IMG/VR virus record: IMGVR_UViG_3300025030_000041
Location: 1-64,000 of that record
Direction: 5' to 3' (one strand)
Length of the DNA: 64,000 nucleotides
Each line of letters opens with the position of its first letter. The stretch's first letter is position 1. Below, one piece after another: positions 31,110-46,590 of this stretch. Under the pieces are notes generated by a model, which saw only the letters and a list, made by a program, of their open reading frames with translations, did not search any database and had not been told where the DNA came from. Both the position numbers and the translations under genes were made by a program.

Positions 31110-32177
31110 TTATTTATTAAATCGATTAAAGTATTGATATGATATTAAATTGTATTTTGCTTTACCAACAAAATCTTTTAAGGTTTTAGCATTACAATAG
31201 CTCATTGCTGATTTTAAATAATCAACAAAGTTATTAGTCCATCCTTCTACTGTATATTCTACTTTATTATATTTTACTATGCCTTCACTTGTAGTTAATT
31301 TAAGTTTACCCCAAGATTGTTGAACCTCTTTAGTAGACATTCCTCTATATTTTTTATATAGAGGAATTTTATTTTTAAATAAAAAATGTTTAATATCTGG
31401 AAATTTATCAATTTTTATTTTTTTAAATAATAAAGTATCTCCGCATGATTCTATTGATTTATTAAAAATAGAACCTACCATAACGTAGTCGGCTCCTAGA
31501 CATATTACTTTTATAATATCACTGAAATTTTTCATGCCGCCATCTGCCACAATTTTAGCAGGTGAGCTTAACGTACAACTTATATCATAGCATTCTTTTA
31601 TTAAAGATCCCATTGGATAACCAATTGAAACGTTAGAGGACGTCGTGCATGCCCCACCGGACCCGATTCCGCACCGTATATAATCAGCACCAGCTTCGCT
31701 TAATATTCTATAAGTTTCAGGATTAGCGATATTTCCAACCATTAGCATAATAGAATTTCCATACATGTCTTTTGCTAATTTAACAATTTCTAATAACTTG
31801 GACATATGCCCATTTGCCATATCTATTAAAATATATTTATGGTCTATCGTTATTTTATTACGAATATATAAAGTAGTAAACTCATCTAATGAATATGACT
31901 TAAAAATTGGCATAGTAGTCATTAGCTTTGATATATCTATATTGCATCCTCTTGGAATACAAACTGGAATTTTATTCTTAATAAATATATCAATATTATT
32001 TTTATCTATTACAGTATCCATTGGAGCAGCTATAATAGGTAAATAATTTTGACATATTAAATTTAAGTGATTATAATATGGATTAACTTGCTTTCTTGAA
32101 TTTATTTTAGAAATGGCATCTGGCATTATTAAAATGTCATTTAAATCAAATTTTATTTTGTCTATATTAAAATCCAT
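31110..32177 (-). CDS. guaC: GMP reductase / IMPDH family
   Basis: AAPMDTV, IDMANGH, GIGSGGACTT, IVADGG, YRGMST, SAMSY. Confidence 0.85.
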   Translation of the reverse strand: MDFNIDKIKFDLNDILIMPDAISKINSRKQVNPYYNHLNLICQNYLPIIAAPMDTVIDKNNIDIFIKNKIPVCIPRGCNIDISKLMTTMPIFKSYSLDEFTTLYIRNKITIDHKYILIDMANGHMSKLLEIVKLAKDMYGNSIMLMVGNIANPETYRILSEAGADYIRCGIGSGGACTTSSNVSIGYPMGSLIKECYDISCTLSSPAKIVADGGMKNFSDIIKVICLGADYVMVGSIFNKSIESCGDTLLFKKIKIDKFPDIKHFLFKNKIPLYKKYRGMSTKEVQQSWGKLKLTTSEGIVKYNKVEYTVEGWTNNFVDYLKSAMSYCNAKTLKDFVGKAKYNLISYQYFNRFNK

Positions 32178-33756: not shown

Positions 33757-35430
33757 TTATAAATTTGTTTCTATTTCAATATCGCTAAAATTTCTTTCGT
33801 ATATTATATTATATTGTTTATTAAAAAGTTCTTTTGGTAAAATATTATGGCTTACTACAAATAAGTTCATATCAGTAGTGTTTATAAAATCTTTTAATAT
33901 TAAACTAACTTTTTCTATACTTCTATGATCTAAACTAGAAAATATTTCATCTAAAAATAATAAATTAATTGATGGTAATTTCATTTTAATAAGTTTCAAA
34001 ATAGATATAATAATAATAATATCCATCTTTTTTCTTTGTCCAGTTGATAATGAGTCTGATGAAATTTCAAATCCAATTTGTCTTATTACTGGATTGAATT
34101 CTTCATCAAAGAAAAAATCAAATTCATATTCTAGATTGTCTATTAGCTCTTTAATATAGGTATTAAACGTTGGAAGTATTTGTGATAACAATATTTTTTT
34201 AATTCCATTTTCACCAAGTATTTCTCCAGTAATAGAGTATATATTATTCTTTTGTTCTATTATTGTTTTTGATTTTTTTAATTCTTTTTGTTTATTTTCT
34301 AAATTAGAAATAATATTATTTAGACTTTTAACTTGTTCATTCGTATTAATCTTAGAATCTATTTCAGCAACTCTATTAATAATTTGTTTTATAGAACTTT
34401 CAGTTTTCCAGTGTTCTTCTTGTTTTATATTTTTATTTTTATTTTCAGTTTCTAATTTTTTTTCATAATCTGTTAAAGATAGTTTTAATTTGGAAATATT
34501 CTTTTTTCTTTCTTCTATAAATTCTTTAATTGACTTGCGTATTTCTTCATGGAAATCGCCATGCAAATCACTTTGGCAATGTGGACACTGTCTTTGCTCT
34601 AGAAATTTTAATTTATTATTATCTGATGTATTTTTATATTCTAATTCATTAATTTCCTTTGTAATTATATTAATATCGCTTTTTATTTTATTAACTTTAT
34701 TATTTAATTCAGTATATTCACTGGCAATTATATTTTTAGTATTAGTTAATTCATTTTTTTTATTTAATAATTCTTCTTTTTCTTTTGCTAATCCATCTTC
34801 AACTTGTTTTATAAGATTTTCTTTTTCTTGTATTGTACTACTAATTTGAGTTGTATTTGAGTCTAATTGAATATCTATTTTATTAATAGACGATTTAACG
34901 TCTTTTACTTTTTCTTTTAAAATATCATTCATTAAATTAATAAGGTCATACCCAAAAATCTTATCAATTATTTTTTTTTTGTCAGTATTATTAAGTTTAA
35001 TAAAACTTTTAAAATCATTAACTGAAAGAGAAATTGTATTTGTAAATATATTAAACGGTAATTTTAATAATTCATTCTCTATATAACTATTAATATTTCT
35101 TTTATCTGGTATATCATAAACTTCTCCATTTATTTTAAGTAATAAAAATCCAGGGTCTAACCCTCTTTCTATTTCTATTACTTGTGAAGATTTAGAAATA
35201 AATTTAGTATAACACCATAAATTTTTATTAATTCGATTTGGTAAATCTTTGTTTTTACGACTAGCACATTTGCCATATAAAACATATGAAATAACATCTA
35301 AAATTGAGCTTTTCCCGCTTCCAGATTGGCCTAATATAACATTAAATTCTTTATCAGTATTGAAATATATTGTCTGTTTTTTATTTCCATATGATGCAAA
35401 ATTTTTCCAAGATACTTCTAATAGTTTCAT
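33757..35430 (-). CDS. 46: Recombination ATPase gp46 (Rad50/SbcC)
   Basis: GQSGSGKS, coiled coil with CPHC hook, LSTGQ, LFLDE. Confidence 0.93.
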   Translation of the reverse strand: MKLLEVSWKNFASYGNKKQTIYFNTDKEFNVILGQSGSGKSSILDVISYVLYGKCASRKNKDLPNRINKNLWCYTKFISKSSQVIEIERGLDPGFLLLKINGEVYDIPDKRNINSYIENELLKLPFNIFTNTISLSVNDFKSFIKLNNTDKKKIIDKIFGYDLINLMNDILKEKVKDVKSSINKIDIQLDSNTTQISSTIQEKENLIKQVEDGLAKEKEELLNKKNELTNTKNIIASEYTELNNKVNKIKSDINIITKEINELEYKNTSDNNKLKFLEQRQCPHCQSDLHGDFHEEIRKSIKEFIEERKKNISKLKLSLTDYEKKLETENKNKNIKQEEHWKTESSIKQIINRVAEIDSKINTNEQVKSLNNIISNLENKQKELKKSKTIIEQKNNIYSITGEILGENGIKKILLSQILPTFNTYIKELIDNLEYEFDFFFDEEFNPVIRQIGFEISSDSLSTGQRKKMDIIIIISILKLIKMKLPSINLLFLDEIFSSLDHRSIEKVSLILKDFINTTDMNLFVVSHNILPKELFNKQYNIIYERNFSDIEIETNL

Positions 35431-36560
35431 TCCTCAGACATTATTAGGTTTTTATTCATTTCGCTAGCCTCTTTATATAACTTTTCAAAATAATTAGATA
35501 CAATTGTTTTAGTATCAGTATCTACTTTAATTGAATCTAAAAATAAATTAACAGCATCAAATGTATTTAAATTTTTTATATCAACGTTTTTTAATGCGTC
35601 ATTAATTTCAATATTTTTTTCACTATCATAAGGAAAAAAATCTATTTTTCTAATTTTAAAATCTTTAATTAATTCTAAAAACTGACTTATTATAAATTTT
35701 CCACTATACTTATTATCTACATAAATATCAACTAAATTATTTTTTAGTAAGGACTCGGATTCTTCTAAAGATAATTCTATTAAATCATGTAAATTCGTTT
35801 TAATAAAAACTGGTGAATACTTATTTTCTATAAATTCTTCTTTAAAATTATTACCAGTAAATTTAAGGGTATACCATCCTTTTTGATTATTACAATCGCT
35901 TCTTTCCATTGCGTATGGAATACCTGTATAAACTACCCAATCTTTTTCTTGTCTATAATGAATATGACCAGAAAATATCTTTTTAAATTTACGTATATTT
36001 TTTAGGTTTAATCCTTGGTCTATTATTCTACTTTTATCAAATTTCATATTTTGAATATCAGCATGACATAATAAATACTCACAATCTTTACTATATTCAT
36101 TAATTATATTTTCAAATTTTTCATAGTCATGTTCGTATGGCATCATGAAAAATTTATTATTGTTAATTTCAAGAATATCATAACTTTCAATAACATGAAT
36201 ATTAGTAGATAATAATTCAAATTGCTTAACTGAATTAATTTCAGTCGTGGACTTATTAAACAAATCATGATTACCTAAAATAATAATTACTTTATTAAAA
36301 TATCCAGATAACTCTTTAAATAATTTTTGAGCTTCGTATAACACCTTAATATTTAAAAATTCTCTTGAATGAAAAATATCGCCCATTAAAAATAAAGTGT
36401 CCTCATCTTTATTATAATCAGATGTTTTTATAATAGTAGGAATAAAATAATTTCTCCAAAAATCCAATTGAATATTTAACCATTCAGATGAGTTACTTCT
36501 AATTCCAAAGTGTAAATCTCCAACTAAATGTAAATTTTTAATTTTATCTAATTTAATCAT
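35427..36560 (-). CDS. 47: Recombination nuclease gp47 (Mre11/SbcD)
   Basis: GDLHFG, GDIFH, GNHD, SGHIH; adjacent to gp46. Confidence 0.93.
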   Translation of the reverse strand: MIKLDKIKNLHLVGDLHFGIRSNSSEWLNIQLDFWRNYFIPTIIKTSDYNKDEDTLFLMGDIFHSREFLNIKVLYEAQKLFKELSGYFNKVIIILGNHDLFNKSTTEINSVKQFELLSTNIHVIESYDILEINNNKFFMMPYEHDYEKFENIINEYSKDCEYLLCHADIQNMKFDKSRIIDQGLNLKNIRKFKKIFSGHIHYRQEKDWVVYTGIPYAMERSDCNNQKGWYTLKFTGNNFKEEFIENKYSPVFIKTNLHDLIELSLEESESLLKNNLVDIYVDNKYSGKFIISQFLELIKDFKIRKIDFFPYDSEKNIEINDALKNVDIKNLNTFDAVNLFLDSIKVDTDTKTIVSNYFEKLYKEASEMNKNLIMSEE

Positions 36561-37320: not shown

Positions 37321-38130
37321 TTAAAGTATTGCACAAATGTTAGTATATCTGTCATTTTCACCTATTACAACTGGATGTAATTCTCCTATTCCAGAATATC
37401 CACACCCACTGTCGGCTAATACTACTGTTTTAGGTACGCCACTGTGTATATAGTTATGAAATCTTGGAAAATTTATTCCTTCGTCTAATCTATTATAATG
37501 TCCGTGTACTGACACCAAATATGGTTCAGGTACTTTAAATATAGTATCTTTCTTTTGATTTCCAAAATCCGAGGATTTTCCCCATAATAAGTCAGAATCA
37601 CCTATATTTTTTATATCACTAAGAGGAGCATGACTAAAAAATATAGTATTAGTAGAATACCTAGTTTTTCCATATTTCTTTAAAAAAGAATAATATTCAC
37701 TATTTAATATTTTTTCTCTCCAATCACTCACTTTACTTGAAATATTATAATGATTATCAAATACTACGCCAAATAAATCTTTGCATGTTATAATTCCATC
37801 ATTATACTCCCATAAATCACTCCATTTTATGAGTTTATTATCTAACAATATTGAAGTATCTTCAGCCGTTCCTATAATAAACATATCATGATTTCCAAGT
37901 AAACATATTGCGTTCCTATTAATAACATAGTCTTCAATCTTTTTTAATACTGCACCTGAATGATTACCTCTATCAATATAGTCACCTAAAAATACATACT
38001 GAATAGTATCATATTTAGATATTATACCAAACTTTCTTTGAAATTTTACCCAGGCATTACATGTTTCTAATGCAAAATTTAATTTGAAAATATCTCCATG
38101 TATATCAGGAATAGCTATATAATAATTCAT
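37321..38130 (-). CDS. Ser/Thr protein phosphatase (PPP-type metallophosphoesterase)
   Basis: DIHG, LGDYIDRG, LGNHD. Confidence 0.85.
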   Translation of the reverse strand: MNYYIAIPDIHGDIFKLNFALETCNAWVKFQRKFGIISKYDTIQYVFLGDYIDRGNHSGAVLKKIEDYVINRNAICLLGNHDMFIIGTAEDTSILLDNKLIKWSDLWEYNDGIITCKDLFGVVFDNHYNISSKVSDWREKILNSEYYSFLKKYGKTRYSTNTIFFSHAPLSDIKNIGDSDLLWGKSSDFGNQKKDTIFKVPEPYLVSVHGHYNRLDEGINFPRFHNYIHSGVPKTVVLADSGCGYSGIGELHPVVIGENDRYTNICAIL

Positions 38131-38191: not shown

Positions 38192-39628
38192 TTATTTATC
38201 TAATTCATTTAGCCTATCAGACAATGCCTTACGCAAAGCTTTATTTTCGAGTCTTTCATTATAAAAATAATTTAATATTTTTCGTGAGACTGAATCAATA
38301 TCCATCCTAAAATATGTATCAAATGCCGTTTTACATATTTTTCTATCTATTAGCTCCTCAATAGATAAATTAAGGCCTTTCCCTAAATATGTATCAGGTG
38401 ATATATTATTGCTACAAATTATGTTCGGATATAGACTAGAAAAGTCCTGACATACTACAGTTTTATAATATCCAGGAATCGGTTCCTTAACGAATGCGCC
38501 TTCATATTTTGGGCCACCTTCATTTTTTTGATACTTTGAGTTATATATTAGTTGTTTTTCTTCTTCTGTTTTTTCAGGTACTTTTAAATTTTGTTCTATG
38601 TATTTTCTAAATATTAGAATTTCACTTATAAATACTGGGCTATTATATTTATTAATATCACATATACTTAAGTTTACCATTTCAAATACAACATCAAGAA
38701 GAAATTTAGAGTCTTCTATTTCTTTTACTAAAATAGAGTCGATAGCATTGTATATTGCAAATTTGCGATAATTTGTTTTATACATTTCTAGTATATTTTC
38801 ATTATCATTTTTAAATTTTTTAACTCCAAGTACTTCTTTTGAAATATAGTCTAATGTATAATTCTCTACAATTTTTAATGGCGACCTGCTTCTAAATAGT
38901 TCAAGGTAGTCTATAACAGCAGTATGAGCTGGAACTAAATATTTTGTTACTCTTTTATTTGTTGCTATATTTTTTGTTGGATTTATTTTTAAATTTTCAC
39001 AGCGTTTCATTAGATATTGCCAGTCAAAATTTAAGAAATTCCATCCAGTTAATAGCGGTATTTTTGGTAGAAATTTATGAAAGAAATACTCTAACATTTC
39101 TATTTCAGTTTTGAACCAAAGATATTTTAAAGTATAGGTTTTTAAATTTGGATTACTTTTTTTAAGATATGTATTCATTTCATTTTCCATATCTTGTTCT
39201 TGACTTCTCAAGTCTTCTCGACACGACAATATATATGCAATATTAGATTCGTTTACTACTGATATTAGAAGAACTTGGTATTTTGCTTCTGATGGTTCTG
39301 GGAATTCATTATTTTCTCCAGTTTCAGTCTCAATATCACAATAATATTTTTTAGGAGTATTAAATTCTGACATTTTATTTTTTTCATCTAGTGTGAGATT
39401 ATTATATAAGAATTCTTCTTGTCTAAAACGTCCTAAATACTCTGTAGGTTTTTTTCTTACATTTTTATTATCCCAACTTTTTAATCCAGTATTTTCTTCA
39501 CAATATTCGTAGTTATATAAATCAGAACTTGGTATATTTTTAATAATAAAGTCTATTTCTTTATTTTTATTAATGTATGATATATACATTTTACTTTTAT
39601 ACTTATTAAATTCAACTCCTACTACCAT
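38192..39628 (-). CDS. 43: Family B DNA polymerase, N-terminal half (exonuclease plus motif A; gp43A-like)
   Basis: DIET (ExoI), GWNFLNFD (ExoII), YNAID (ExoIII), DFSSLYP (motif A); ends before motif B. Confidence 0.9.
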   Translation of the reverse strand: MVVGVEFNKYKSKMYISYINKNKEIDFIIKNIPSSDLYNYEYCEENTGLKSWDNKNVRKKPTEYLGRFRQEEFLYNNLTLDEKNKMSEFNTPKKYYCDIETETGENNEFPEPSEAKYQVLLISVVNESNIAYILSCREDLRSQEQDMENEMNTYLKKSNPNLKTYTLKYLWFKTEIEMLEYFFHKFLPKIPLLTGWNFLNFDWQYLMKRCENLKINPTKNIATNKRVTKYLVPAHTAVIDYLELFRSRSPLKIVENYTLDYISKEVLGVKKFKNDNENILEMYKTNYRKFAIYNAIDSILVKEIEDSKFLLDVVFEMVNLSICDINKYNSPVFISEILIFRKYIEQNLKVPEKTEEEKQLIYNSKYQKNEGGPKYEGAFVKEPIPGYYKTVVCQDFSSLYPNIICSNNISPDTYLGKGLNLSIEELIDRKICKTAFDTYFRMDIDSVSRKILNYFYNERLENKALRKALSDRLNELDK

Positions 39629-39821
39629 TATTTTCTAAATTAATTAAGGTTTTTAATTTTTCTTTTAATATTATTTTATTTTTTATTTCTTCTATACGAT
39701 TATTAAAATCTGTAGTAACGTCATCTCCATCAAATACTTTATAGTTTTTAGTACTTTTATCAAAAAAAATTTTGCCAATTATATAATTAGGTTCGTCAGT
39801 ATCACCAAAAATAACTTCCAT
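39612..39821 (-). CDS. Small hypothetical protein
   Basis: ORF track; C-terminal KEKLKTLI. Confidence 0.6.
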   Translation of the reverse strand: MEVIFGDTDEPNYIIGKIFFDKSTKNYKVFDGDDVTTDFNNRIEEIKNKIILKEKLKTLINLENNGSRS

Positions 39822-40002
39822 GGATTATTTTAGTATTTTTTAATTTAAGCTTTAATTTTTTATTTGGGCATATTGGTTCAGCCAATATTTTACCGTTAGA
39901 ATTTATTGTAATTTTCCAAGTACTACCCGTTTCATCTCTCATTATAATGCCAGATTTTTCACTTAGTATATGGACATTTCTGTCATTATCTACTGAAAAC
40001 AC
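39802..40002 (-). CDS. Small hypothetical protein, paralog of 40059
   Basis: DETGSTWKITINSNGKILAEP versus DEDGDAWSLKISRDGTLKVKP. Confidence 0.6.
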   Translation of the reverse strand: MFSVDNDRNVHILSEKSGIIMRDETGSTWKITINSNGKILAEPICPNKKLKLKLKNTKIIHGSYFW

Positions 40003-40058: not shown

Positions 40059-40406
40059 TTAAAAATCCAATAATATCTTTACTTTAAGTTTAGTCTTTTT
40101 AGATTCATTTAATGGTTTAACTTTAAGAGTTCCATCTCTTGAAATTTTTAAACTCCAGGCATCTCCGTCTTCGTCAGCTAAAAGCATTTCACTAGCCGGG
40201 TTATAATGATAGGTTCCTATAGAACTAGGTGTATGACTGGATGTGCTGATTACACTACCTATTGAAGTATTATAAGTAGGAATAACTCTATTGTTATCAC
40301 TTATATAAGTATGGGTACGAGTATCTCCTGAAATTAAAGCACTATCATTTCTAATATGCATATTTGAATTATTATTAGATGAGTCTTTTTTTATTTTTTT
40401 AGCCAT
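40059..40406 (-). CDS. Small hypothetical protein
   Basis: ORF track; paralogous C-terminal domain. Confidence 0.6.
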   Translation of the reverse strand: MAKKIKKDSSNNNSNMHIRNDSALISGDTRTHTYISDNNRVIPTYNTSIGSVISTSSHTPSSIGTYHYNPASEMLLADEDGDAWSLKISRDGTLKVKPLNESKKTKLKVKILLDF

Positions 40407-40420
40407 TTTTTATCTTATTT

Positions 40421-40873
40421 TTAAATATGATTTGTACTTCCAAAACCGCCAGTTCTTGTTGTTTTTTGAAATGCAAAACATTCATCATCATTTTTACATT
40501 TAATTAAACTAGGTTTAATATATGGTAAATACATAAACTGAATTATCTTTTCTCCCGGATTAATATCAATACTATATTTACTCGTATTATATAAATGCAA
40601 GTGTACTTCTAAATGATAATCTGGATCAATTAAACACGCTCCGACTTGCAGTCGTTTTTTAGTAGCAACTCCACTTTTATTTACTGCTAATAGACATGTT
40701 CCAATTGGTATATTAAATTTAATTCCAGACGGTATTAGTACGTCTTCTCCTGGTAATAAACTTTTTTGTTGAAAATCGTTTGGAACATACATATCAATTC
40801 CAACAGAGTCTGATGTTCCTATTGATGGGTCTTTCACATCTCTGGTTTTTACATATTTTAATTTCTGATTCAT
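40421..40873 (-). CDS. dut: Trimeric dUTPase
   Basis: GIDM, KSG, IDPDY, RTGGFGST. Confidence 0.93.
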   Translation of the reverse strand: MNQKLKYVKTRDVKDPSIGTSDSVGIDMYVPNDFQQKSLLPGEDVLIPSGIKFNIPIGTCLLAVNKSGVATKKRLQVGACLIDPDYHLEVHLHLYNTSKYSIDINPGEKIIQFMYLPYIKPSLIKCKNDDECFAFQKTTRTGGFGSTNHI

Positions 40874-40884
40874 AAGTAGTGCTA

Positions 40885-41322
40885 TTATTTTTTATTTTTA
40901 CATTTTTTACATAAAATAGATACCCAGCGACTGTTTACTACTTCTACGTCAGTCATACTTCCACATTCCATACAAGTAGTATCACAAAGATTTTCGGCCA
41001 TTTCTATAATTGCATTTATTTTTTCATTACCGTATGTATATATCCTTAGTGTTGCATATTTTTCTTTAATATCAGAAATCATGCAACTATCAGTTAACTT
41101 AGATCTTAATTTATAAGCCCATTGATACTTTATTTGAACCACTGAATTTCCAGTAGCTAAATAATGTATAGCTTTTTTTATAAAAAACGGAATCCATCTT
41201 GGCCACATTTCTTTTTCTATTTCTACTATTGCATTTTTTACAATAGGCTTCCATCCCTTGGGAACACTTGGATATGAATACCCTACATGCCTATATTTTT
41301 TATAAAAATTAGAGTCGTTCAT
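40885..41322 (-). CDS. Conserved phage hypothetical protein with Zn ribbon
   Basis: GW...IKEKYATLRIY...CMECG...LCKKC. Confidence 0.7.
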   Translation of the reverse strand: MNDSNFYKKYRHVGYSYPSVPKGWKPIVKNAIVEIEKEMWPRWIPFFIKKAIHYLATGNSVVQIKYQWAYKLRSKLTDSCMISDIKEKYATLRIYTYGNEKINAIIEMAENLCDTTCMECGSMTDVEVVNSRWVSILCKKCKNKK

Positions 41323-41962
41323 TTAAATTAAAATGTTTTTTATAAATATGTAAATTTACTATAAAATGGTAATACCATCCAACTTCTATACTTAATTTAT
41401 TAGAGACTAATTCTTGTAATTTAGAGAAACAATACTGGTCATTACAAAAGCCATAGACTAAATCACACGACCTCATTAATACTGACATACATAATTTATT
41501 ATCGATTATAGTAAAATTAATAGAATATGTGCATGGAGTATCTTTACTATATAATTCTATTTCTTTAGCATCATAAATTGATATGGATGCTTTGCGAGTA
41601 TCCTTTTTGTTTTTTAATATATCTACTATTTTATCTAACTGGCTATTCCTGGACCATTGATACCCATAATTTGAGTTTACGTTTCCAGCATCATCCATCA
41701 TATTATACCAAATTTTCGCTTTTTTAGCAATTTCTATGGCCGACGGATCTCCTGATAAATACCATTGCCATTCATATTCAGCGTAATCTTTTTTCCATTT
41801 TCTCCATGGAACTTCTATTAGATTATCTAATGGATTTAATAAATAAAAGCCAGTATTAAATAGGGCCTTTGTATTATCAAAAGATATTCCTTGTGCCATT
41901 ATAGTATTATATAATGTTAAGAACGCGTCAGATGAATTTTTAAATGTATTAGTTTTTATCAT
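41309..41962 (-). CDS. Thymidylate synthase-fold enzyme, probably acting on dCMP (gp42-like)
   Basis: NSNYG, DTRKA, catalytic PC, RSCDLVYGFCND with Asp at the specificity position, NLHIY. Confidence 0.75.
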   Translation of the reverse strand: MIKTNTFKNSSDAFLTLYNTIMAQGISFDNTKALFNTGFYLLNPLDNLIEVPWRKWKKDYAEYEWQWYLSGDPSAIEIAKKAKIWYNMMDDAGNVNSNYGYQWSRNSQLDKIVDILKNKKDTRKASISIYDAKEIELYSKDTPCTYSINFTIIDNKLCMSVLMRSCDLVYGFCNDQYCFSKLQELVSNKLSIEVGWYYHFIVNLHIYKKHFNLNERL

Positions 41963-42527
41963 TATTTAATAAAATAAGTATTTCATCAATATTAAATGGC
42001 CGATATTCTCCTAAAATATTTTTAGCATTATCTATACCTACGTCCATTGATTTTCCTATTCCTTGCAATGCTCCATGGCTATGCCCAAATAAATGAATGC
42101 TTCCTTTATGTGAAGTAGGCCATACTCTATGTGAATAATGACTTAAAAATATATTAATATTATTATGAGTAATTGATAAAGTGTTTTGTACTGAAGAAAA
42201 TAAGTCTTTAGCATAAATAATTCCAGTTTCTATTATGAATTTTTTATTAGTTCGTATGTATGAATCATGATTGCCTAAAATAAAATGTATAGTTTTACAG
42301 TTAATTTGGTCTCTAAATCTTTTAATATTATATGGATGGCCAAATGACCAATCACCTAAAAAATATAAAATATCATTATCTTTTACATTTTCATTTATTT
42401 TTTCTATAAAGAAATTAGTCATTTGAATCTCATCAACGAAATCTCTATATCCAGTTTTCCATTCAGATATAGTCGGGCCAGAAATATTCTTATGATAAGC
42501 GTGTAAGTCGGAAGTAAACCAAATCAT
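41949..42527 (-). CDS. Calcineurin-like phosphoesterase
   Basis: SDLH, LGD, GNHD, SHY, GHSH, DVGID. Confidence 0.85.
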   Translation of the reverse strand: MIWFTSDLHAYHKNISGPTISEWKTGYRDFVDEIQMTNFFIEKINENVKDNDILYFLGDWSFGHPYNIKRFRDQINCKTIHFILGNHDSYIRTNKKFIIETGIIYAKDLFSSVQNTLSITHNNINIFLSHYSHRVWPTSHKGSIHLFGHSHGALQGIGKSMDVGIDNAKNILGEYRPFNIDEILILLNNDKN

Positions 42528-43033
42528 AGATTGTTTATTATAAAAGTAAGTTGTTCATTTAAATTTTCGGATTCAGTATTTACCTTTAAATATTTACAAT
42601 TAGTTTTTGTTAAATATTCTTCATAAAATGAATTTATGTCTTTTATTTTATTTAAAGGTATTATCTCATCATTATACTCTTTATAATTATCTTTATAACA
42701 AAAAACAATTATTGTTTTATATTCTGCGTATAATTTGTCTAATTCAAAAATAAGGGGTTCATTTATATTTCGGTTAAAACATTTTCCATATACATATTCA
42801 CATATATTATGCCTATCAAATATAATATTTTTAGTTTGAGTTTGTTTAATAAAATCAAACAAAAAAGGAGCATGATTTTCAAAATGGGTTTTATGATTTT
42901 CTATTTTAAATAAAGAGTGTTCTAATGTATTTTTATAATATTTCCAACCTAAAATATTGGATAATTTCTTTGATATTGTGGTTTTTCCAGTATTATCAGC
43001 TCCACAAAAAATTATTAAGTTATAATTTAGCAT
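42524..43033 (-). CDS. dNMP (thymidylate-type) kinase
   Basis: GADNTGKTT, IFDRH..EYVYG. Confidence 0.8.
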   Translation of the reverse strand: MLNYNLIIFCGADNTGKTTISKKLSNILGWKYYKNTLEHSLFKIENHKTHFENHAPFLFDFIKQTQTKNIIFDRHNICEYVYGKCFNRNINEPLIFELDKLYAEYKTIIVFCYKDNYKEYNDEIIPLNKIKDINSFYEEYLTKTNCKYLKVNTESENLNEQLTFIINNL

Positions 43034-43344
43034 TCTATATTGTATACTCCTGAGTTTAAATCAATAGTTGTTTTAATTGATGACGACGCTATTCCAGTTG
43101 AAGTAGAAGATGTTCCACACGTAATATTAGGAGTATTCCACCATGGATAAACTGGAGTTGGATTATAAGGGTAATCTCTAATTACAATAGGATTAGCCCA
43201 GTTAATAGTATTATTAGTTTCTATTTTAAAGTTTTTCCATTCATTATCAGGAAGAAGTTTTTTTATAGTATTATAAAATTCTCCTAGATTTATAGATTCT
43301 TCAATTCTTATAATTTTTTCTATTGTATCTAATTGTATTTTCAT
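43027..43344 (-). CDS. Hypothetical protein
   Basis: ORF track. Confidence 0.65.
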   Translation of the reverse strand: MKIQLDTIEKIIRIEESINLGEFYNTIKKLLPDNEWKNFKIETNNTINWANPIVIRDYPYNPTPVYPWWNTPNITCGTSSTSTGIASSSIKTTIDLNSGVYNIEC

Positions 43345-43931
43345 GAATTTATTATTTTTTTTAATTCTATTGATTGCTTAATATTTTTATCCTTATCATT
43401 AAATCTTTTTACGTATGATGGATGATAAAGCTTATAAAATTCATAATCTATATTATTTATAGATTTTATAGTTTTTTCAAAAAACTTTATATTTTTATTT
43501 AAAATGTGATTAGTTGTTTCATTTCCTAATAAAAATATTTTTTTAGGATTTACTAACTGTATTTGTTCATATAAAAAGTTACAGCAATTATAAATTTCAG
43601 TTGAATTTAAATTTGAATTATTTGGAGAAGAACATTTACATAAATTTGTAAAAAATACTTTTGTCATTATAGTTTCTATTCCTAATTCACTTATTAGGTA
43701 TTTTCCTAATTTGCAATTAAGCCAATCTAATTTATACTTTTCATAAAATTCATTACTATTTGTAATGGCGGTATAATCGTGTTCTATTCCTGGGTTTTGA
43801 ACAATTATAAAAATTTCTATTTCATTTAAATTGTCATTAAAATAAACATGCGGAAATGAAAAAATACTATTTTGGTTTAGCCTAGGACATTTCTTACATT
43901 TTAATATTTTATTTTGTAAAGTCTTAAGCAT
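43341..43931 (-). CDS. Uracil-DNA glycosylase superfamily (family 4/5-like, Fe-S)
   Basis: CKKCPRL, QNPG, TNLCKC, LLG, HPSY. Confidence 0.8.
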   Translation of the reverse strand: MLKTLQNKILKCKKCPRLNQNSIFSFPHVYFNDNLNEIEIFIIVQNPGIEHDYTAITNSNEFYEKYKLDWLNCKLGKYLISELGIETIMTKVFFTNLCKCSSPNNSNLNSTEIYNCCNFLYEQIQLVNPKKIFLLGNETTNHILNKNIKFFEKTIKSINNIDYEFYKLYHPSYVKRFNDKDKNIKQSIELKKIINS

Positions 43932-45015
43932 TAATCATAGTTCTATTGTGTTGGGCTTCTAAAATTTGTTTTATAGTTTCATGTAATGAAATAGTAATTT
44001 TCCAATTTGGATAATCTTTTTGAAATTTAGAATAGTCAGTTACATAAAAAATATGGTCGCCTATTCTAGGGTCATCTAAAAAAGTGTAGTTATTCCATTC
44101 TTTTACATATTTAAATGAATTCATTATATTTATAGCTTCTATAATTGAGCATTCATTTCCGCGCCCGCCACCTGCATTATATACTTCGCCTTGTTTAGGA
44201 TTTTGATAAAAATTCCAAAACATATTTATTAAATCATAACTATGTATATTATCTCTAACTCTTTTTCCTCTATCTCCGAAAATATTATAATGATTTCCTG
44301 TTATTACACATTTAGCCAAATATGATAAAAATCCATGTAATTCAGTTCCAGAATGGGCCGGGCCAGTCAAACACCCGCCTCTAAATATACCAATATTCAT
44401 TCCAAAATATTTACCATATTCTTGACACATTATATCGGCTGAAACTTTAGATGCACCAAATACAGAGTGCTTACTGTTATCAATAGACATAGATTCGTCT
44501 ATTCCATTTTTATAAAATTTATGTGATTGGTCTATTTCAAATCTATTTTCTTTCTCGATTAATGGAAGATAATTTGGAGTATCCCCGTATACTTTATTTG
44601 TACTTGTAAATATAAACACTGCATCTTTACTATAAGTTCTAGTTGCCTCTAATAAATATAAAGTTCCTAGTGCATTAACACTAAAATCTTTAATAGGGTC
44701 CGTCGCTGCCCAATCATGTGACGGTTGTGCTGCCGTGTGAACCACTAAATGTATATCTGAATTATATAATTCAAATATCTTATTTAATTGTTCAACATTT
44801 CTAATATCAATATTATAGTGAATAAATTTTTCTGGATATTTCGTTTTTAATTTATTCGTATTCCATAAGGTAGAAGCCGTTTTACCAAAAAATTCTTCAC
44901 GCATATTATTGTCTATTCCAATAATAATATCAAATTTATTAATAAAAAAATCAACAGCCTCTGACCCAATTAATCCGCCTGATCCAGTTACTATACATAC
45001 TTTATTCTTTTTCAT
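43924..45015 (-). CDS. NAD-dependent NDP-sugar epimerase (CDP-paratose 2-epimerase/RfbE-like)
   Basis: TGSGGLIG, HTAAQPSHD, TSTNKVYG, FGASK, FRGGCLTG. Confidence 0.88.
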   Translation of the reverse strand: MKKNKVCIVTGSGGLIGSEAVDFFINKFDIIIGIDNNMREEFFGKTASTLWNTNKLKTKYPEKFIHYNIDIRNVEQLNKIFELYNSDIHLVVHTAAQPSHDWAATDPIKDFSVNALGTLYLLEATRTYSKDAVFIFTSTNKVYGDTPNYLPLIEKENRFEIDQSHKFYKNGIDESMSIDNSKHSVFGASKVSADIMCQEYGKYFGMNIGIFRGGCLTGPAHSGTELHGFLSYLAKCVITGNHYNIFGDRGKRVRDNIHSYDLINMFWNFYQNPKQGEVYNAGGGRGNECSIIEAINIMNSFKYVKEWNNYTFLDDPRIGDHIFYVTDYSKFQKDYPNWKITISLHETIKQILEAQHNRTMINA

Positions 45016-45183
45016 ATTTTTTATTTTTGTTTTTCAGATGAATACGCTATGAGTGTTGTCGAAATGATAACTAACATTTCGTAATTAGTTGGCTGAACTC
45101 CATACATTAAAAGATTTAGAGTTACATAAATGTCTAGTAGTACTACTAAACTTAAAATAATAGTATTTAATAAATTTTTCATG

Positions 45184-46446
45184 TTATTTGTTTTTAATTA
45201 ATTCTTTTAAATCATTAATAATTATATGAGCTGACTTTTCATATGACTCGTAATCATATCCTATTTTTTTACAAAGACTACTATAGTTAGTATACTCGGT
45301 ATTATTTGTATTTATTATTTCAACTGCTTTTATAATACATTCTGATAATGAGTTAACCTCAATTTCATTAGATTCATTTACTTCACAAAAGAATGGGTAA
45401 TTTGTATTATTTGAATGTTTAAATTTATACCAATAATTATTAACTTTTGGCATAATTGTAATATTTCCTGCTATTAGGGCTTCACAATGAGTTACTCCGC
45501 CATGAACCTCATTTGTAAATAAATTACAACTCACACGTGCTCTATTTATAAAAGTTAAATAATCTTCTCTTGACCAATTTAAATTATTAGGTAGTACCTC
45601 TACTGTATTATTAGATAAAGTATTAATTAAACTTAATTGTTCTTCTGTTACCTTTCTAGTTGGATTAAGCATTATTGCTTTAAATGGTATATTAGTTTTA
45701 GATTTTGCAAGTCCTACTGCTTCAGCGAACTTATGATAATTATTATATCTATTCGCTGAATCTGATATTCTATTACCAAAATAGATAGTTGTTTCATCAA
45801 ATTTCGAAACACTAGAATATTTTAATACTTCTTTAGCCCATACCCCAATATTCCAGCTTGTTGTTTTTTTAATTAAATTTCTATTTTTATAAAATGTATC
45901 ATACGCGTCTAACGATTCTCTTTCATTTTCTTTAGATTGAAATGCTGTTAAATTTGAATTATTAAAGCTTTCCATTTGTCTTTCAAAATATGTAATCTGT
46001 TCTGACACTTTTTTAGATACAGGAGTATCCATAAAATAATTAGTACTAACAATTGGAATATTTAATTTTAATTCATAAAATAAAGTATTCCAGTTTTTAG
46101 TTAATGTATTTTGGTCATTAATCATTACGTCACATTCTTTTAATAAATTATATTGTTTTTTCCAAAATATATAATCAAAATGGTATCTAGTATTAGACGG
46201 CCCAACTGGAGAATCAAATTCTATAAAAGTTATTCTAGAGTGATATTTTTGTTCAAACATACTATAGTATGTCCAATACTCTTTGGATAATCTAATGTCT
46301 GGAATAGCAATTAAAAAAGATATATTACTATCATTTTCTAAAATTTCTGATATTATTCCAATACATATATTCATACATGCGTCTGTACTTAGTATAAAGT
46401 TCTTTCCATCATTATTACTTATTTGAGTAGCATAAAATACTTTCAT
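45184..46446 (-). CDS. GT-B glycosyltransferase-like protein (probable start MKVFY)
   Basis: YFGNR, SREDYL...EVHGGVTHCEAL; the promoter at 46464-46492 favours the 46446 start. Confidence 0.6.
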   Translation of the reverse strand: MKVFYATQISNNDGKNFILSTDACMNICIGIISEILENDSNISFLIAIPDIRLSKEYWTYYSMFEQKYHSRITFIEFDSPVGPSNTRYHFDYIFWKKQYNLLKECDVMINDQNTLTKNWNTLFYELKLNIPIVSTNYFMDTPVSKKVSEQITYFERQMESFNNSNLTAFQSKENERESLDAYDTFYKNRNLIKKTTSWNIGVWAKEVLKYSSVSKFDETTIYFGNRISDSANRYNNYHKFAEAVGLAKSKTNIPFKAIMLNPTRKVTEEQLSLINTLSNNTVEVLPNNLNWSREDYLTFINRARVSCNLFTNEVHGGVTHCEALIAGNITIMPKVNNYWYKFKHSNNTNYPFFCEVNESNEIEVNSLSECIIKAVEIINTNNTEYTNYSSLCKKIGYDYESYEKSAHIIINDLKELIKNK

Positions 46447-46590
46447 AACACTTTTTTTGAAACAATATATTTGAAAACTCATACAATGTTTTATAAAATT
46501 TTAGCGTTTTTAGAAATAATGTGTATAATTAAATAATATAATGTATTAAATGCCAATCATTTATAGTATACTATTATATTTAATTTGGGA

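What the first reader, a model, noticed from the sequence alone, without database searches (positions are those of the whole stretch)
40421..46492. Candidate sugar-hypermodified-cytosine pathway
Seen: one leftward operon holds a GT-B-like transferase, an RfbE-like NDP-sugar epimerase, a UDG-family protein, a dNMP kinase, a phosphoesterase, a short TS-fold enzyme and dUTPase. The TS-fold enzyme has RSCDLVYGFCND, with Asp where dUMP-specific ThyA has Asn (RSCDVFLGLPFN). Known: that Asp confers dCMP specificity in T4 gp42. Inference: modified dCMP is made, phosphorylated and glycosylated with an unusual, phage-made sugar. The UDG-like protein may edit or discriminate modified from unmodified DNA.
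Basis: partly seen in the sequence, partly recalled or inferred. Interest (0 to 1): 0.68.

Follow-up and report, generated by a model that had tools for sequence, protein, structure and literature searches.

The report
Phage gene set for sugar-coated cytosine
A 246-kb groundwater phage carries a tightly packed operon that most likely replaces cytosine with 5-hydroxymethylcytosine and then attaches a sugar to it in DNA. It uses a virus-only glycosyltransferase family that, in most related environmental phages, is paired with a 5-hydroxycytosine-making enzyme instead.

Summary
In detail: all seven gene types are at the stated coordinates, in one overlapping leftward operon. The TS-fold enzyme has the T4 gp42 signature in E. 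coli ThyA numbering (E58, L143D, C146, D169 kept, N177D, Y209). This predicts 5-hydroxymethyl-dCMP, not dTMP and not 5-hydroxy-dCMP.

The 432-aa protein has no Pfam hit but folds as a GT4-like GT-B (Z 31.6 to MshA). It belongs to a family found only in viral or metagenomic contigs. In 22 of 23 well-flanked loci it lies within 6 kb of a TS homolog, a YorR/Tmk-like kinase (homologous to RB69 gp45) and the same SDR.

About 49 of these loci carry the RB69-type 5-hydroxycytosine signature. Only the window's clade (five loci) carries the hydroxymethylase type. That clade's GT-Bs are monophyletic, and a UDG-like gene is present in 4 of 4 loci with enough flank.

Two cautions. The "RfbE-like" SDR has Phe in place of the catalytic Tyr in all 46 phage copies and in its bacterial homologs, so 2-epimerase chemistry cannot be assumed. 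The UDG-like protein keeps its uracil-reading Asn and its His but has a changed motif A.

Verdict: a new variant of a known kind. The sugar and the UDG role remain open.

The parts
45184..46482 (-). GT4-like GT-B glycosyltransferase of a virus-only family without a Pfam model. Probable true start is at 46446 (420 aa). Predicted DNA 5-hydroxymethylcytosine glycosyltransferase.
   Evidence: No family hit. AF2 pLDDT 90.3. Z 31.6 to MshA, 31.4 to BshA, 30.8 to SPS; Foldseek E about 1e-11. More than 150 metagenomic homologs. Nearest ESM Atlas clusters are 100% viral. No relative found in 50,697 phage records or in 185,579 species genomes. Linked to TS, kinase and SDR in 22 of 23 loci.
45021..45182 (-). 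53-aa hydrophobic ORF between the GT-B and the SDR. Uncertain gene, not seen in other modules.
   Evidence: ORF list. Matched only in the window's own phage.
43924..45015 (-). Extended SDR of the CDP-tyvelose-2-epimerase-like branch, with the catalytic Tyr replaced by Phe. Predicted sugar-nucleotide tailoring enzyme of unknown chemistry.
   Evidence: 9rl0 2e-33 and 1orr 1e-31. Phe at TyvE Tyr164 in all 46 module copies and in 5 of 5 bacterial homologs. TNK segment kept; VAM segment replaced by PSH (PMC13098431). The bacterial homolog (63% identity) lies in a polysaccharide locus.
43341..43931 (-). Family-4-like UDG-superfamily protein with the Fe-S cysteines kept and an altered motif A (QNPG).
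   Evidence: PF03167 2e-12. Aligned to 4zbx, 1l9g and 1ui0. Motifs compared in 7 module copies. Present in 4 of 4 hydroxymethylase-type loci with enough flank.
43027..43344 (-). 105-aa ORF of unknown function, overlapping both neighbours.
   Evidence: No family hit. Not found in related loci.
42524..43033 (-). YorR/thymidylate-kinase-like P-loop nucleotide kinase. Predicted 5hm-dCMP kinase.
   Evidence: AAA_28 and phrog_761. AF2 pLDDT 90.8; top Foldseek hits 3kb2/2axp YorR, then thymidylate kinases. Profile versus RB69 gp45: probability 96%, E 2.9e-9. Only such gene in the genome.
41949..42527 (-). Calcineurin-like metallophosphoesterase. Lineage-specific addition, role unknown.
   Evidence: PF00149 and phrog_547. 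Absent from all related modules.
41309..41962 (-). Thymidylate-synthase-fold enzyme with the dCMP hydroxymethylase signature.
   Evidence: PF00303 7e-25. PDB: MilA 2.6e-17, T4 gp42 4.7e-13. Residues E58, Y94, D143, C146, R166, D169, D177, H207, Y209 are identical to T4 gp42. 48% identical to a Bacteroides fragilis phage gene annotated as dCMP hydroxymethyltransferase. Only TS homolog in the genome; no ThyX.
40885..41322 (-). 145-aa ORF with a C-terminal CxxC...CxxC pair, function unknown.
   Evidence: Translation. Only a sub-threshold zinc-finger hit. Not found in related loci.
40421..40873 (-). Trimeric-type dUTPase.
   Evidence: PF00692 6e-14, phrog_135 1e-28; NCBIfam dut 9e-21, below cut-off.
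   Evidence: PF00383 1.6e-22. A dCMP deaminase lies next to the TS homolog in relatives L022 and L098.

Best explanation
The operon is a cytosine hypermodification pathway with a step before replication and a step after it.

1. The TS-fold enzyme uses methylene-tetrahydrofolate and water to turn dCMP into 5-hydroxymethyl-dCMP. This is inferred from its residue signature.
2. The YorR/Tmk-like kinase, the phage's only nucleotide kinase, makes the diphosphate. A host NDP kinase makes the triphosphate, and the phage's T4-like family B polymerase puts 5hmC into DNA. This step is inferred.
3. The GT4-like GT-B then moves a sugar from an NDP-sugar onto the hydroxyl of 5hmC in DNA. If the GT4 retaining mechanism holds, the linkage is alpha. 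This is inferred from fold plus conserved gene linkage.
4. The TyvE-like SDR most likely alters a host-made NDP-hexose before transfer, or alters the sugar after transfer. Its chemistry is open because the catalytic Tyr is Phe.
5. The UDG-like protein most likely removes uracil-type bases that a 5hmC genome and a dCMP deaminase would generate (U, or 5-hydroxymethyluracil from deaminated 5hmC or 5hm-dCMP). This is the weakest step.

The dUTPase and the dCMP deaminase manage the pyrimidine pool. The product would shield the DNA from restriction and CRISPR nucleases, as in T-even phages.
For: TS enzyme:
- Signature identical to T4 gp42 at nine diagnostic positions and different from RB69 gp48. 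The meaning of N177D, L143D/E and D169N comes from PMC13326640.
- Best solved relatives are the hydroxymethylases MilA and T4 gp42.

GT-B:
- Fold Z 31.6, aligned over the full length to GT4 retaining enzymes.
- Invariant columns include FGNR, NPT.K and E-x8-E in the C-terminal domain.

Module linkage:
- Of 23 unique loci with enough flank, 22 have a TS homolog, 22 the kinase and 22 the SDR within 6 kb of the GT-B.
- The order TS, GT, kinase is the same as RB69 gp48, gp47:46, gp45; DLP3 gp80, gp79, gp78; and RL38J1 gp216, gp215, gp214. Products of those clusters were determined experimentally.
- The kinase is homologous to RB69 gp45 (probability 96%) and shares its top structural hit, YorR 3kb2, with DLP3 gp78.

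Co-variation of GT-B with TS type:
- The GT-Bs next to hydroxymethylase-type TS genes form one clade (SH-aLRT 100).
- Two further members of that group have the same TS type.

Other:
- The kinase is the only candidate nucleotide kinase in the genome.
- The operon sits among T4-like replication genes.
Against: - No chemical or read-level evidence of modified DNA is available here.
- The GT-B shows no sequence similarity to any proven DNA glycosyltransferase: RB69-type AraT1 probability is below 1%, and there is no tblastn hit in phage records.
- The SDR lacks the canonical catalytic Tyr, and the phage has no nucleotidyltransferase. An unusual sugar is therefore not assured.
- No dCTPase (MazG-type) was found, so complete replacement of C is not assured.
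- The phage has a dCMP deaminase and a dUTPase but no other thymidylate synthase. This leaves some room for a dUMP-directed role.
- Motif A of the UDG-like protein lacks the family-4 Glu, so even its glycosylase activity is unproven.
Confidence: 0.68

Rival explanations
1. The base is made as proposed, but the sugar is ordinary (for example glucose from host UDP-glucose). The Tyr-less SDR is then not a donor-making epimerase. It is inactive, a binding subunit, or it acts elsewhere.
For: Catalytic Tyr164 is replaced by Phe and the VAM segment is changed. No nucleotidyltransferase in the genome. One hydroxymethylase-type relative (L098) shows no SDR within 5 kb, and another (L099) uses a different SDR with a canonical Tyr.
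Against: The SDR is the best-conserved module member (53-60% identity) and is present in 22 of 23 loci. The Phe is invariant in bacterial homologs too, and those sit in polysaccharide loci. This argues for an active enzyme with an alternative catalytic base, as precedents with altered SDR triads suggest (the precedents are from my own knowledge).
Confidence: 0.2
2. The GT-B and SDR glycosylate something other than DNA, such as virion proteins or the host envelope. They lie near the TS homolog only because all are early genes.
For: The best viral structural matches include actinophage glycosyltransferases of unknown acceptor. The fold is shared with many small-molecule and lipid glycosyltransferases. 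The SDR's bacterial homologs serve polysaccharide synthesis.
Against: Linkage to the TS homolog and kinase holds in 22 of 23 loci across phages whose GT-Bs are only 38-50% identical. The GT-B phylogeny follows the TS chemistry. The gene order is the same as in clusters with proven DNA glycosylation. The family is absent from bacterial genomes.
Confidence: 0.07
3. The TS-fold enzyme makes a different product: 5-hydroxy-dCMP as in most relatives, 5-methyl-dCMP, or plain dTMP.
For: About 49 related modules use the 5-hydroxycytosine type. It is the phage's only TS homolog, although the phage encodes a dCMP deaminase and a dUTPase that feed dUMP. Residue rules are correlative.
Against: D169 is kept, whereas D169N marked all tested 5hodCMP synthases. 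E58 and Y209 are kept, as in folate-using enzymes. D at position 143 replaces the water-excluding Leu. D at position 177 replaces the dUMP-reading Asn.
Confidence: 0.08

Closest known systems
T4 glucosyl-hydroxymethylcytosine pathway (gp42 dCMP hydroxymethylase, gp1 dNMP kinase, alpha- and beta-glucosyltransferases)
   Same: The TS-fold enzyme has the identical nine-residue signature. The logic is the same: base made as a mononucleotide, then kinase, polymerase and a DNA GT-B. It sits in a T4-like replication gene neighbourhood.
   Different: The kinase is YorR/Tmk-like, not gp1-like. The GT-B has no sequence similarity to T4 glucosyltransferases; it is GT4-like by fold. No MazG-type dCTPase. 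The SDR and the UDG-like gene are extra.
Arabinosyl-5-hydroxycytosine clusters of RB69 and DLP3, and the hexosyl-5-hydroxycytosine cluster of RL38J1 (PMC13326640)
   Same: Same triad of TS homolog, first glycosyltransferase and Tmk-like nucleotide kinase, side by side. The kinase is homologous. The first GT has the same best structural matches, MshA and SPS. Most metagenomic relatives of the window's module carry the same 5hodCMP-synthase signature.
   Different: The window's TS homolog is the hydroxymethylase type (D169 kept). The GT-B is a different sequence family. Donor supply is a TyvE-like SDR, not the arabinose-5-P isomerase, kinase-uridylyltransferase and phosphatase set, and not a UDP-Galp mutase. 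A UDG-like gene is added.
Methyltransferase/TET-dependent 5hmC glycosylation gene clusters of phage metaviromes (bioRxiv 10.1101/2023.12.21.572611)
   Same: Phage glycosyltransferases related to cell-envelope enzymes put varied sugars on 5hmC.
   Different: There, 5hmC is made on DNA after replication by a methyltransferase plus a dioxygenase. Here it is made as a nucleotide by a TS homolog.
CDP-tyvelose 2-epimerase (TyvE/RfbE; 1orr, 9rl0)
   Same: Closest solved relatives. NAD-binding glycine motif, Thr124, Lys168 and the TNK segment are kept.
   Different: Tyr164 is Phe and the VAM segment is PSH, in all phage and sampled bacterial members. It is not a demonstrated 2-epimerase.
Family 4 uracil-DNA glycosylases (TM0511 1l9g, Tth 1ui0, Sto 4zbx)
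   Same: Same fold family. Four Fe-S cysteines, the Asn of the TN..KC segment and the His of motif B are kept.
   Different: Motif A is [QR][NS][PA]G instead of GE[AG]PG in all seven module copies. It is embedded in a DNA hypermodification module.

Membership tests
[quoted passage not shown] | TS fold with catalytic Cys146 and the phosphate-binding R166/S167 | tested here: met
   PF00303 7e-25; C146, R166 and S167 aligned.
[quoted passage not shown] | Asp at ThyA N177 (dCMP rather than dUMP) | tested here: met
   D in the window, T4 gp42 and MilA; the rule is from PMC13326640.
[quoted passage not shown] | Acidic residue at ThyA L143 (water admitted, hydroxymethyl rather than methyl) | tested here: met
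   D in three of four alignments and in the HMMER pairings with MilA and a TS. The 57-sequence alignment placed a gap there.
[quoted passage not shown] | Product is 5hm-dCMP | not testable with these tools
   Needs an enzyme assay or nucleoside LC-MS.
5-hydroxy-dCMP synthase (RB69 gp48 type) | Asn at ThyA D169 (with F58 and F209 in all examples seen here) | tested here: not met
   The window has D169, E58 and Y209. About 49 related loci have N169, F58 and F209.
GT-B glycosyltransferase, GT4-like | Two Rossmann-like domains aligned over the full length to GT4 enzymes | tested here: met
   Z 31.6 with 363 residues aligned to MshA, and similar values to BshA, SPS and PimA.
GT-B glycosyltransferase, GT4-like | Match to a GT1/GT4 sequence model (PF00534, PF13439, PF13692) | tested here: not met
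   No Pfam hit at E<=1; PF00534 finds nothing in the genome.
GT-B glycosyltransferase, GT4-like | E-x7-E donor-binding motif | tested here: inconclusive
   The invariant pair E313...E322 has one extra residue of spacing (E-x8-E).
Known phage DNA glycosyltransferases (T4 AGT/BGT, RB69-type arabinosyltransferase 1) | Detectable sequence or profile similarity | tested here: not met
   hhalign probability below 1% against RB69 gp46, RB69 gp47 and the intact Mosigvirus ortholog. No tblastn match in 50,697 phage records. Only a language-model resemblance to the AGT family.
Known phage DNA glycosylation systems (T4, RB69/DLP3/RL38J1 types) | DNA 5hmC or 5hoC as the acceptor | not testable with these tools
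   Inferred from gene linkage only.
CDP-tyvelose 2-epimerase (TyvE) | SDR catalytic triad Thr124, Tyr164, Lys168 | tested here: not met
   Thr and Lys are present; Tyr164 is Phe in the window and in all 46 module copies. The triad is defined in PMC13098431.
CDP-tyvelose 2-epimerase (TyvE) | TNK and VAM substrate-positioning segments | tested here: inconclusive
   TNK is kept; VAM is replaced by PSH.
Family 4 uracil-DNA glycosylase | Motif A GE[AG]PG | tested here: not met
   QNPG in the window; [QR][NS][PA]G in seven module copies.
Family 4 uracil-DNA glycosylase | Fe-S cysteines, base-reading Asn, motif B His | tested here: met
   All are aligned with TM0511 and Tth UDG. The cysteines are lost in one relative, L023.
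Cluster-linked Tmk-like nucleotide kinase (RB69 gp45 / DLP3 gp78 type) | Homology to RB69 gp45 and a YorR/Tmk-like fold | tested here: met
   hhalign probability 96%, E 2.9e-9; Foldseek top hits 3kb2/2axp.
T4 gp1 dNMP kinase | Similarity beyond the P-loop | tested here: not met
   Only 22 P-loop columns align, probability 13%; no gp1 homolog in the genome.

The most novel reading that the evidence does not exclude
The virion DNA carries a base not yet described: 5-(glycosyloxymethyl)cytosine whose sugar is shaped by a Tyr-less TyvE-like SDR with non-canonical chemistry. A virus-only GT-B family installs it, and that family has switched acceptor between 5-hydroxycytosine and 5-hydroxymethylcytosine. 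The UDG-family protein, found in every hydroxymethylase-type module with enough flank, is a dedicated proofreader (or base-flipping helper) for the hypermodified genome rather than a general uracil repair enzyme.
Probability: 0.25. Interest if true: 0.8.

Novelty: new variant of a known kind. Interest (0 to 1): 0.6.

Why it matters
Sugar-modified cytosines decide whether a phage survives restriction enzymes, CRISPR nucleases, type IV restriction enzymes and defence glycosylases.

This locus points to an unstudied DNA glycosyltransferase family that is common in freshwater, marine and groundwater T4-like phages. The family appears to work with two different cytosine chemistries.

It also adds two partner enzymes not seen in the characterised clusters: an atypical SDR and a UDG-family protein. 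It gives a ready set of natural pairs (hydroxylase-type versus hydroxymethylase-type modules) for asking how a DNA glycosyltransferase picks its acceptor, and which new sugars decorate environmental phage DNA.

Tried and rejected
- Sequence links from the GT-B to known DNA glycosyltransferases: tblastn against 50,697 phage records found nothing. hhalign against RB69 gp46, RB69 gp47 and the intact Mosigvirus ortholog gave probability below 1%. A pattern plus tblastn scan of 185,579 species genomes found nothing.
- The kinase has no tblastn hit in phage records.
- The word search for the UDG-like protein found only two relatives, so its family was studied from module loci only.
- The uncultured 634-kb phage LR745206 has the SDR (56% identity) but no TS homolog or GT-B nearby. 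It was not informative for the module.
- The 424-aa protein that follows the SDR in many relatives has no Pfam hit, no similarity to the GT-B and no homolog in this genome.
- The promoter and terminator scan was no better than shuffles in this AT-rich DNA, so operon boundaries rest on gene packing only.
- No paper on DNA modification in the Bacteroides fragilis phages with the closest TS homolog was found. The supplements of PMC13326640 are not held, so I could not check whether its tested IMG/VR enzymes come from this module.
- Complex prediction (UDG-like with GT-B) was not run, because gene neighbourhood was the only reason for it.
- Read laying was not run. All holders are Logan contigs of groundwater metagenomes, with no RNA runs, and contigs cannot show base modification.
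- The large HMMER representative search was not used, because the word search and family scans sufficed.

Full report
**Setting.** The window is the first 64 kb of a 246,115-bp viral contig, about 25% G+C, with CheckV completeness 92%. It was assembled from groundwater metagenomes. The phage is distantly T4-like: homologs of gp43, UvsX, gp41, gp44, gp46/47 and gp4 show 23-33% identity. The finding lies in a long leftward block (about 31.1-46.5 kb) of replication and nucleotide-metabolism genes. That block also holds the N-terminal part of a family B polymerase, SbcCD-like nuclease genes, a dCMP deaminase and an IMPDH/GMP-reductase-like gene.

**Observation.** Ten ORFs fill 40421-46482 on the minus strand. 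Neighbours overlap by 4-14 nt or are separated by 1-11 nt, so co-transcription is plausible. The promoter and terminator scan was no better than shuffled sequence. Family scans confirm the dUTPase, TS-fold protein, metallophosphoesterase, P-loop kinase, UDG-superfamily protein and extended SDR.

The 432-aa protein matches no Pfam, PHROG or NCBIfam model, even at E<=1. A confident AlphaFold2 model (pLDDT 90.3) aligns over its full length with GT4-type retaining GT-B enzymes: MshA Z 31.6, BshA 31.4, sucrose-phosphate synthase 30.8 (Foldseek).

**The TS-fold enzyme.** Its best solved relatives are the CMP hydroxymethylase MilA (2.6e-17), a thymidylate synthase (6auj, 2.6e-15) and T4 dCMP hydroxymethylase (4.7e-13). 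A 2026 study (PMC13326640) gives residue rules in E. coli ThyA numbering:
- N177D marks dCMP use.
- An acidic residue at L143 marks a non-methyl product.
- D169N marks the flavin-dependent 5-hydroxy-dCMP synthases. All nine tested natural D169N enzymes made 5-hydroxycytosine.

In my alignments the window enzyme reads E58, Y94, D143, C146, R166, D169, D177, H207, Y209. This is identical to T4 gp42 and unlike RB69 gp48, which reads F58, E143, N169, F209. The prediction is 5-hydroxymethyl-dCMP.

It is the only TS homolog in the genome, and there is no ThyX. The closest gene in an isolated phage is in Bacteroides fragilis phages (48% identity, annotated dCMP hydroxymethyltransferase).

**A conserved module.** The GT-B has more than 150 metagenomic homologs. 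Its nearest ESM Atlas clusters are all viral. It has no relative in 50,697 phage records or in 185,579 species genomes.

I fetched 12 viral and 69 metagenomic loci, plus several contigs by exact protein look-up. Among 46 unique complete GT-B loci, 23 have at least 3 kb upstream and 4.5 kb downstream. Of these 23:
- 22 carry a TS homolog, 22 a Tmk-like kinase and 22 the same SDR within 6 kb, usually in the order TS, GT-B, kinase, SDR.
- 11 add a 424-aa unknown protein.
- 5 add a UDG-like gene.

The order TS, glycosyltransferase, kinase is the same as in RB69 (gp48, gp47:46, gp45), DLP3 (gp80, gp79, gp78) and RL38J1 (gp216, gp215, gp214). The glycosylated 5-hydroxycytosines of those phages were determined chemically.

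The module kinase is homologous to RB69 gp45 (hhalign probability 96%, E 2.9e-9). Its model (pLDDT 90.8) hits YorR 3kb2 first and then thymidylate kinases, which is the same top hit reported for DLP3 gp78. The GT-B is not detectably similar in sequence to the RB69-type first arabinosyltransferase. It is a different family in the same position, with the same best structural matches.

**Two chemistries, one glycosyltransferase family.** Of the TS homologs next to this GT-B, about 49 have exactly the RB69 gp48 signature. Only the window, L022, L023 and L098 have the T4 gp42 signature. L099's partial upstream ORF resembles a TS C-terminus and keeps H..Y there.

These are also the GT-Bs most similar to the window's (56-60% identity). 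In a quick maximum-likelihood tree, the three included in it form one clade with SH-aLRT 100 on a long stem. That was a quick search with long branches, so it should be treated as provisional.

The window is therefore a rarer hydroxymethylase-type variant of a module that is mostly hydroxylase-type. The glycosyltransferase lineage tracks the base chemistry. This is what one expects if the modified base in DNA is its acceptor.

**The kinase as the nucleotide kinase.** The genome has no homolog of T4 gp1, guanylate kinase, thymidylate kinase (Pfam) or NDP kinase. The module kinase is the only ORF under 300 aa with an N-terminal Walker A motif. It is therefore the only phage candidate for 5hm-dCMP phosphorylation. 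RB69 and DLP3 use a gp1-type kinase for that step and still keep the Tmk-like gene, so its exact substrate remains inferred.

**The SDR.** By homology it is TyvE/RfbE-like (9rl0 2e-33, 1orr 1e-31). The TyvE triad is Thr124, Tyr164, Lys168, with TNK and VAM segments (PMC13098431). Here Tyr164 is Phe and VAM is PSH, while Thr, Lys, TNK and the NAD-binding glycine motif are kept.

The Phe is present in all 46 module SDRs. It is also present in 5 of 5 sampled bacterial homologs at 62-67% identity, from Flavobacterium, Sporocytophaga and a Sphingomonadales MAG. One of these bacterial homologs sits in a polysaccharide locus with rml genes, GT2/GT4, Wzx and Wzy.

This is a conserved and presumably active subfamily working on sugar nucleotides, but a 2-epimerase activity cannot be assumed. 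The phage has no NTP_transferase gene, so any donor must start from a host NDP-sugar.

**The UDG-like protein.** It aligns with family 4 UDGs and keeps the four Fe-S cysteines, the Asn of the TN..KC segment and the motif B His. Motif A is QNPG, and [QR][NS][PA]G across seven module copies, instead of GE[AG]PG. From my own knowledge, this resembles the NPG of MUG and SMUG enzymes.

It occurs in 4 of 4 hydroxymethylase-type loci with enough flank, usually overlapping or abutting the GT-B. It occurs in few hydroxylase-type loci. The retained uracil-reading residues favour removal of U or 5-hydroxymethyluracil. This is sensible for a 5hmC genome made in the presence of a dCMP deaminase. They do not favour discrimination of C from modified C. 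This remains the least secure step.

**What is not part of the conserved module.** The metallophosphoesterase and the 145-aa, 105-aa and 53-aa ORFs are found only in this phage. No MazG-type dCTPase was found, so complete replacement of cytosine is not assured.

The system works like the T4 and RB69 pathways. Its glycosyltransferase, SDR and UDG-like components fail membership tests for the known families. I rate it a new variant of a known kind, with moderately high interest. No step needed referral.

Noticed in passing
window 38192-39628 (-), and G000 about 72852-73193 (+), outside the window: The family B DNA polymerase appears split. The exonuclease domain and the start of the polymerase domain are in a 478-aa ORF here. 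The next part of the polymerase domain matches a 576-aa ORF about 33 kb away on the other strand.
   Followed up: partly
window 43924-45015 (-); bacterial homologs P0122, P0195, P0204, P0212, P0233; locus L095: A large subfamily of TyvE-like SDRs, in phages and in Bacteroidota and other bacteria, has Phe in place of the catalytic Tyr and PSH in place of the VAM segment. In Flavobacterium it lies in a polysaccharide locus directly after a 631-aa protein with no Pfam hit. Its chemistry appears uncharacterised.
   Followed up: partly
L004:13051-14325 and equivalents in 11 of 23 related loci: A conserved 424-aa protein follows the SDR in many hydroxylase-type modules. It has no Pfam hit and no similarity to the GT-B, and it is absent from this genome. 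Some relatives also carry a second SDR between the GT-B and the kinase. It is only 22-30% identical to the window's SDR and lacks the [FY]GxSK motif spacing found in the main SDRs.
   Followed up: partly
window 40059-40406 (-) and 39802-40002 (-): Two small adjacent ORFs share a short C-terminal motif (BLASTP E 4e-5 over 28 residues). They may be paralogs of unknown function, just downstream of the dUTPase.
   Followed up: partly
window 31110-32177 (-), 33757-36560 (-), 37321-38130 (-): An IMPDH/GMP-reductase-like gene, an SbcC/SbcD-like pair and a further metallophosphoesterase lie in the same leftward block. There is no tRNA gene in the window.
   Followed up: no
L002 (Bacteroides phage BF503P4), 5154-5915 and 7989-8669: These isolated Bacteroides fragilis phages carry two TS homologs, both with D143, D169 and D177, but one has Leu at the E58 position. 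A dUTPase 40% identical to the window's lies between them. No paper on their DNA modification was found.
   Followed up: no
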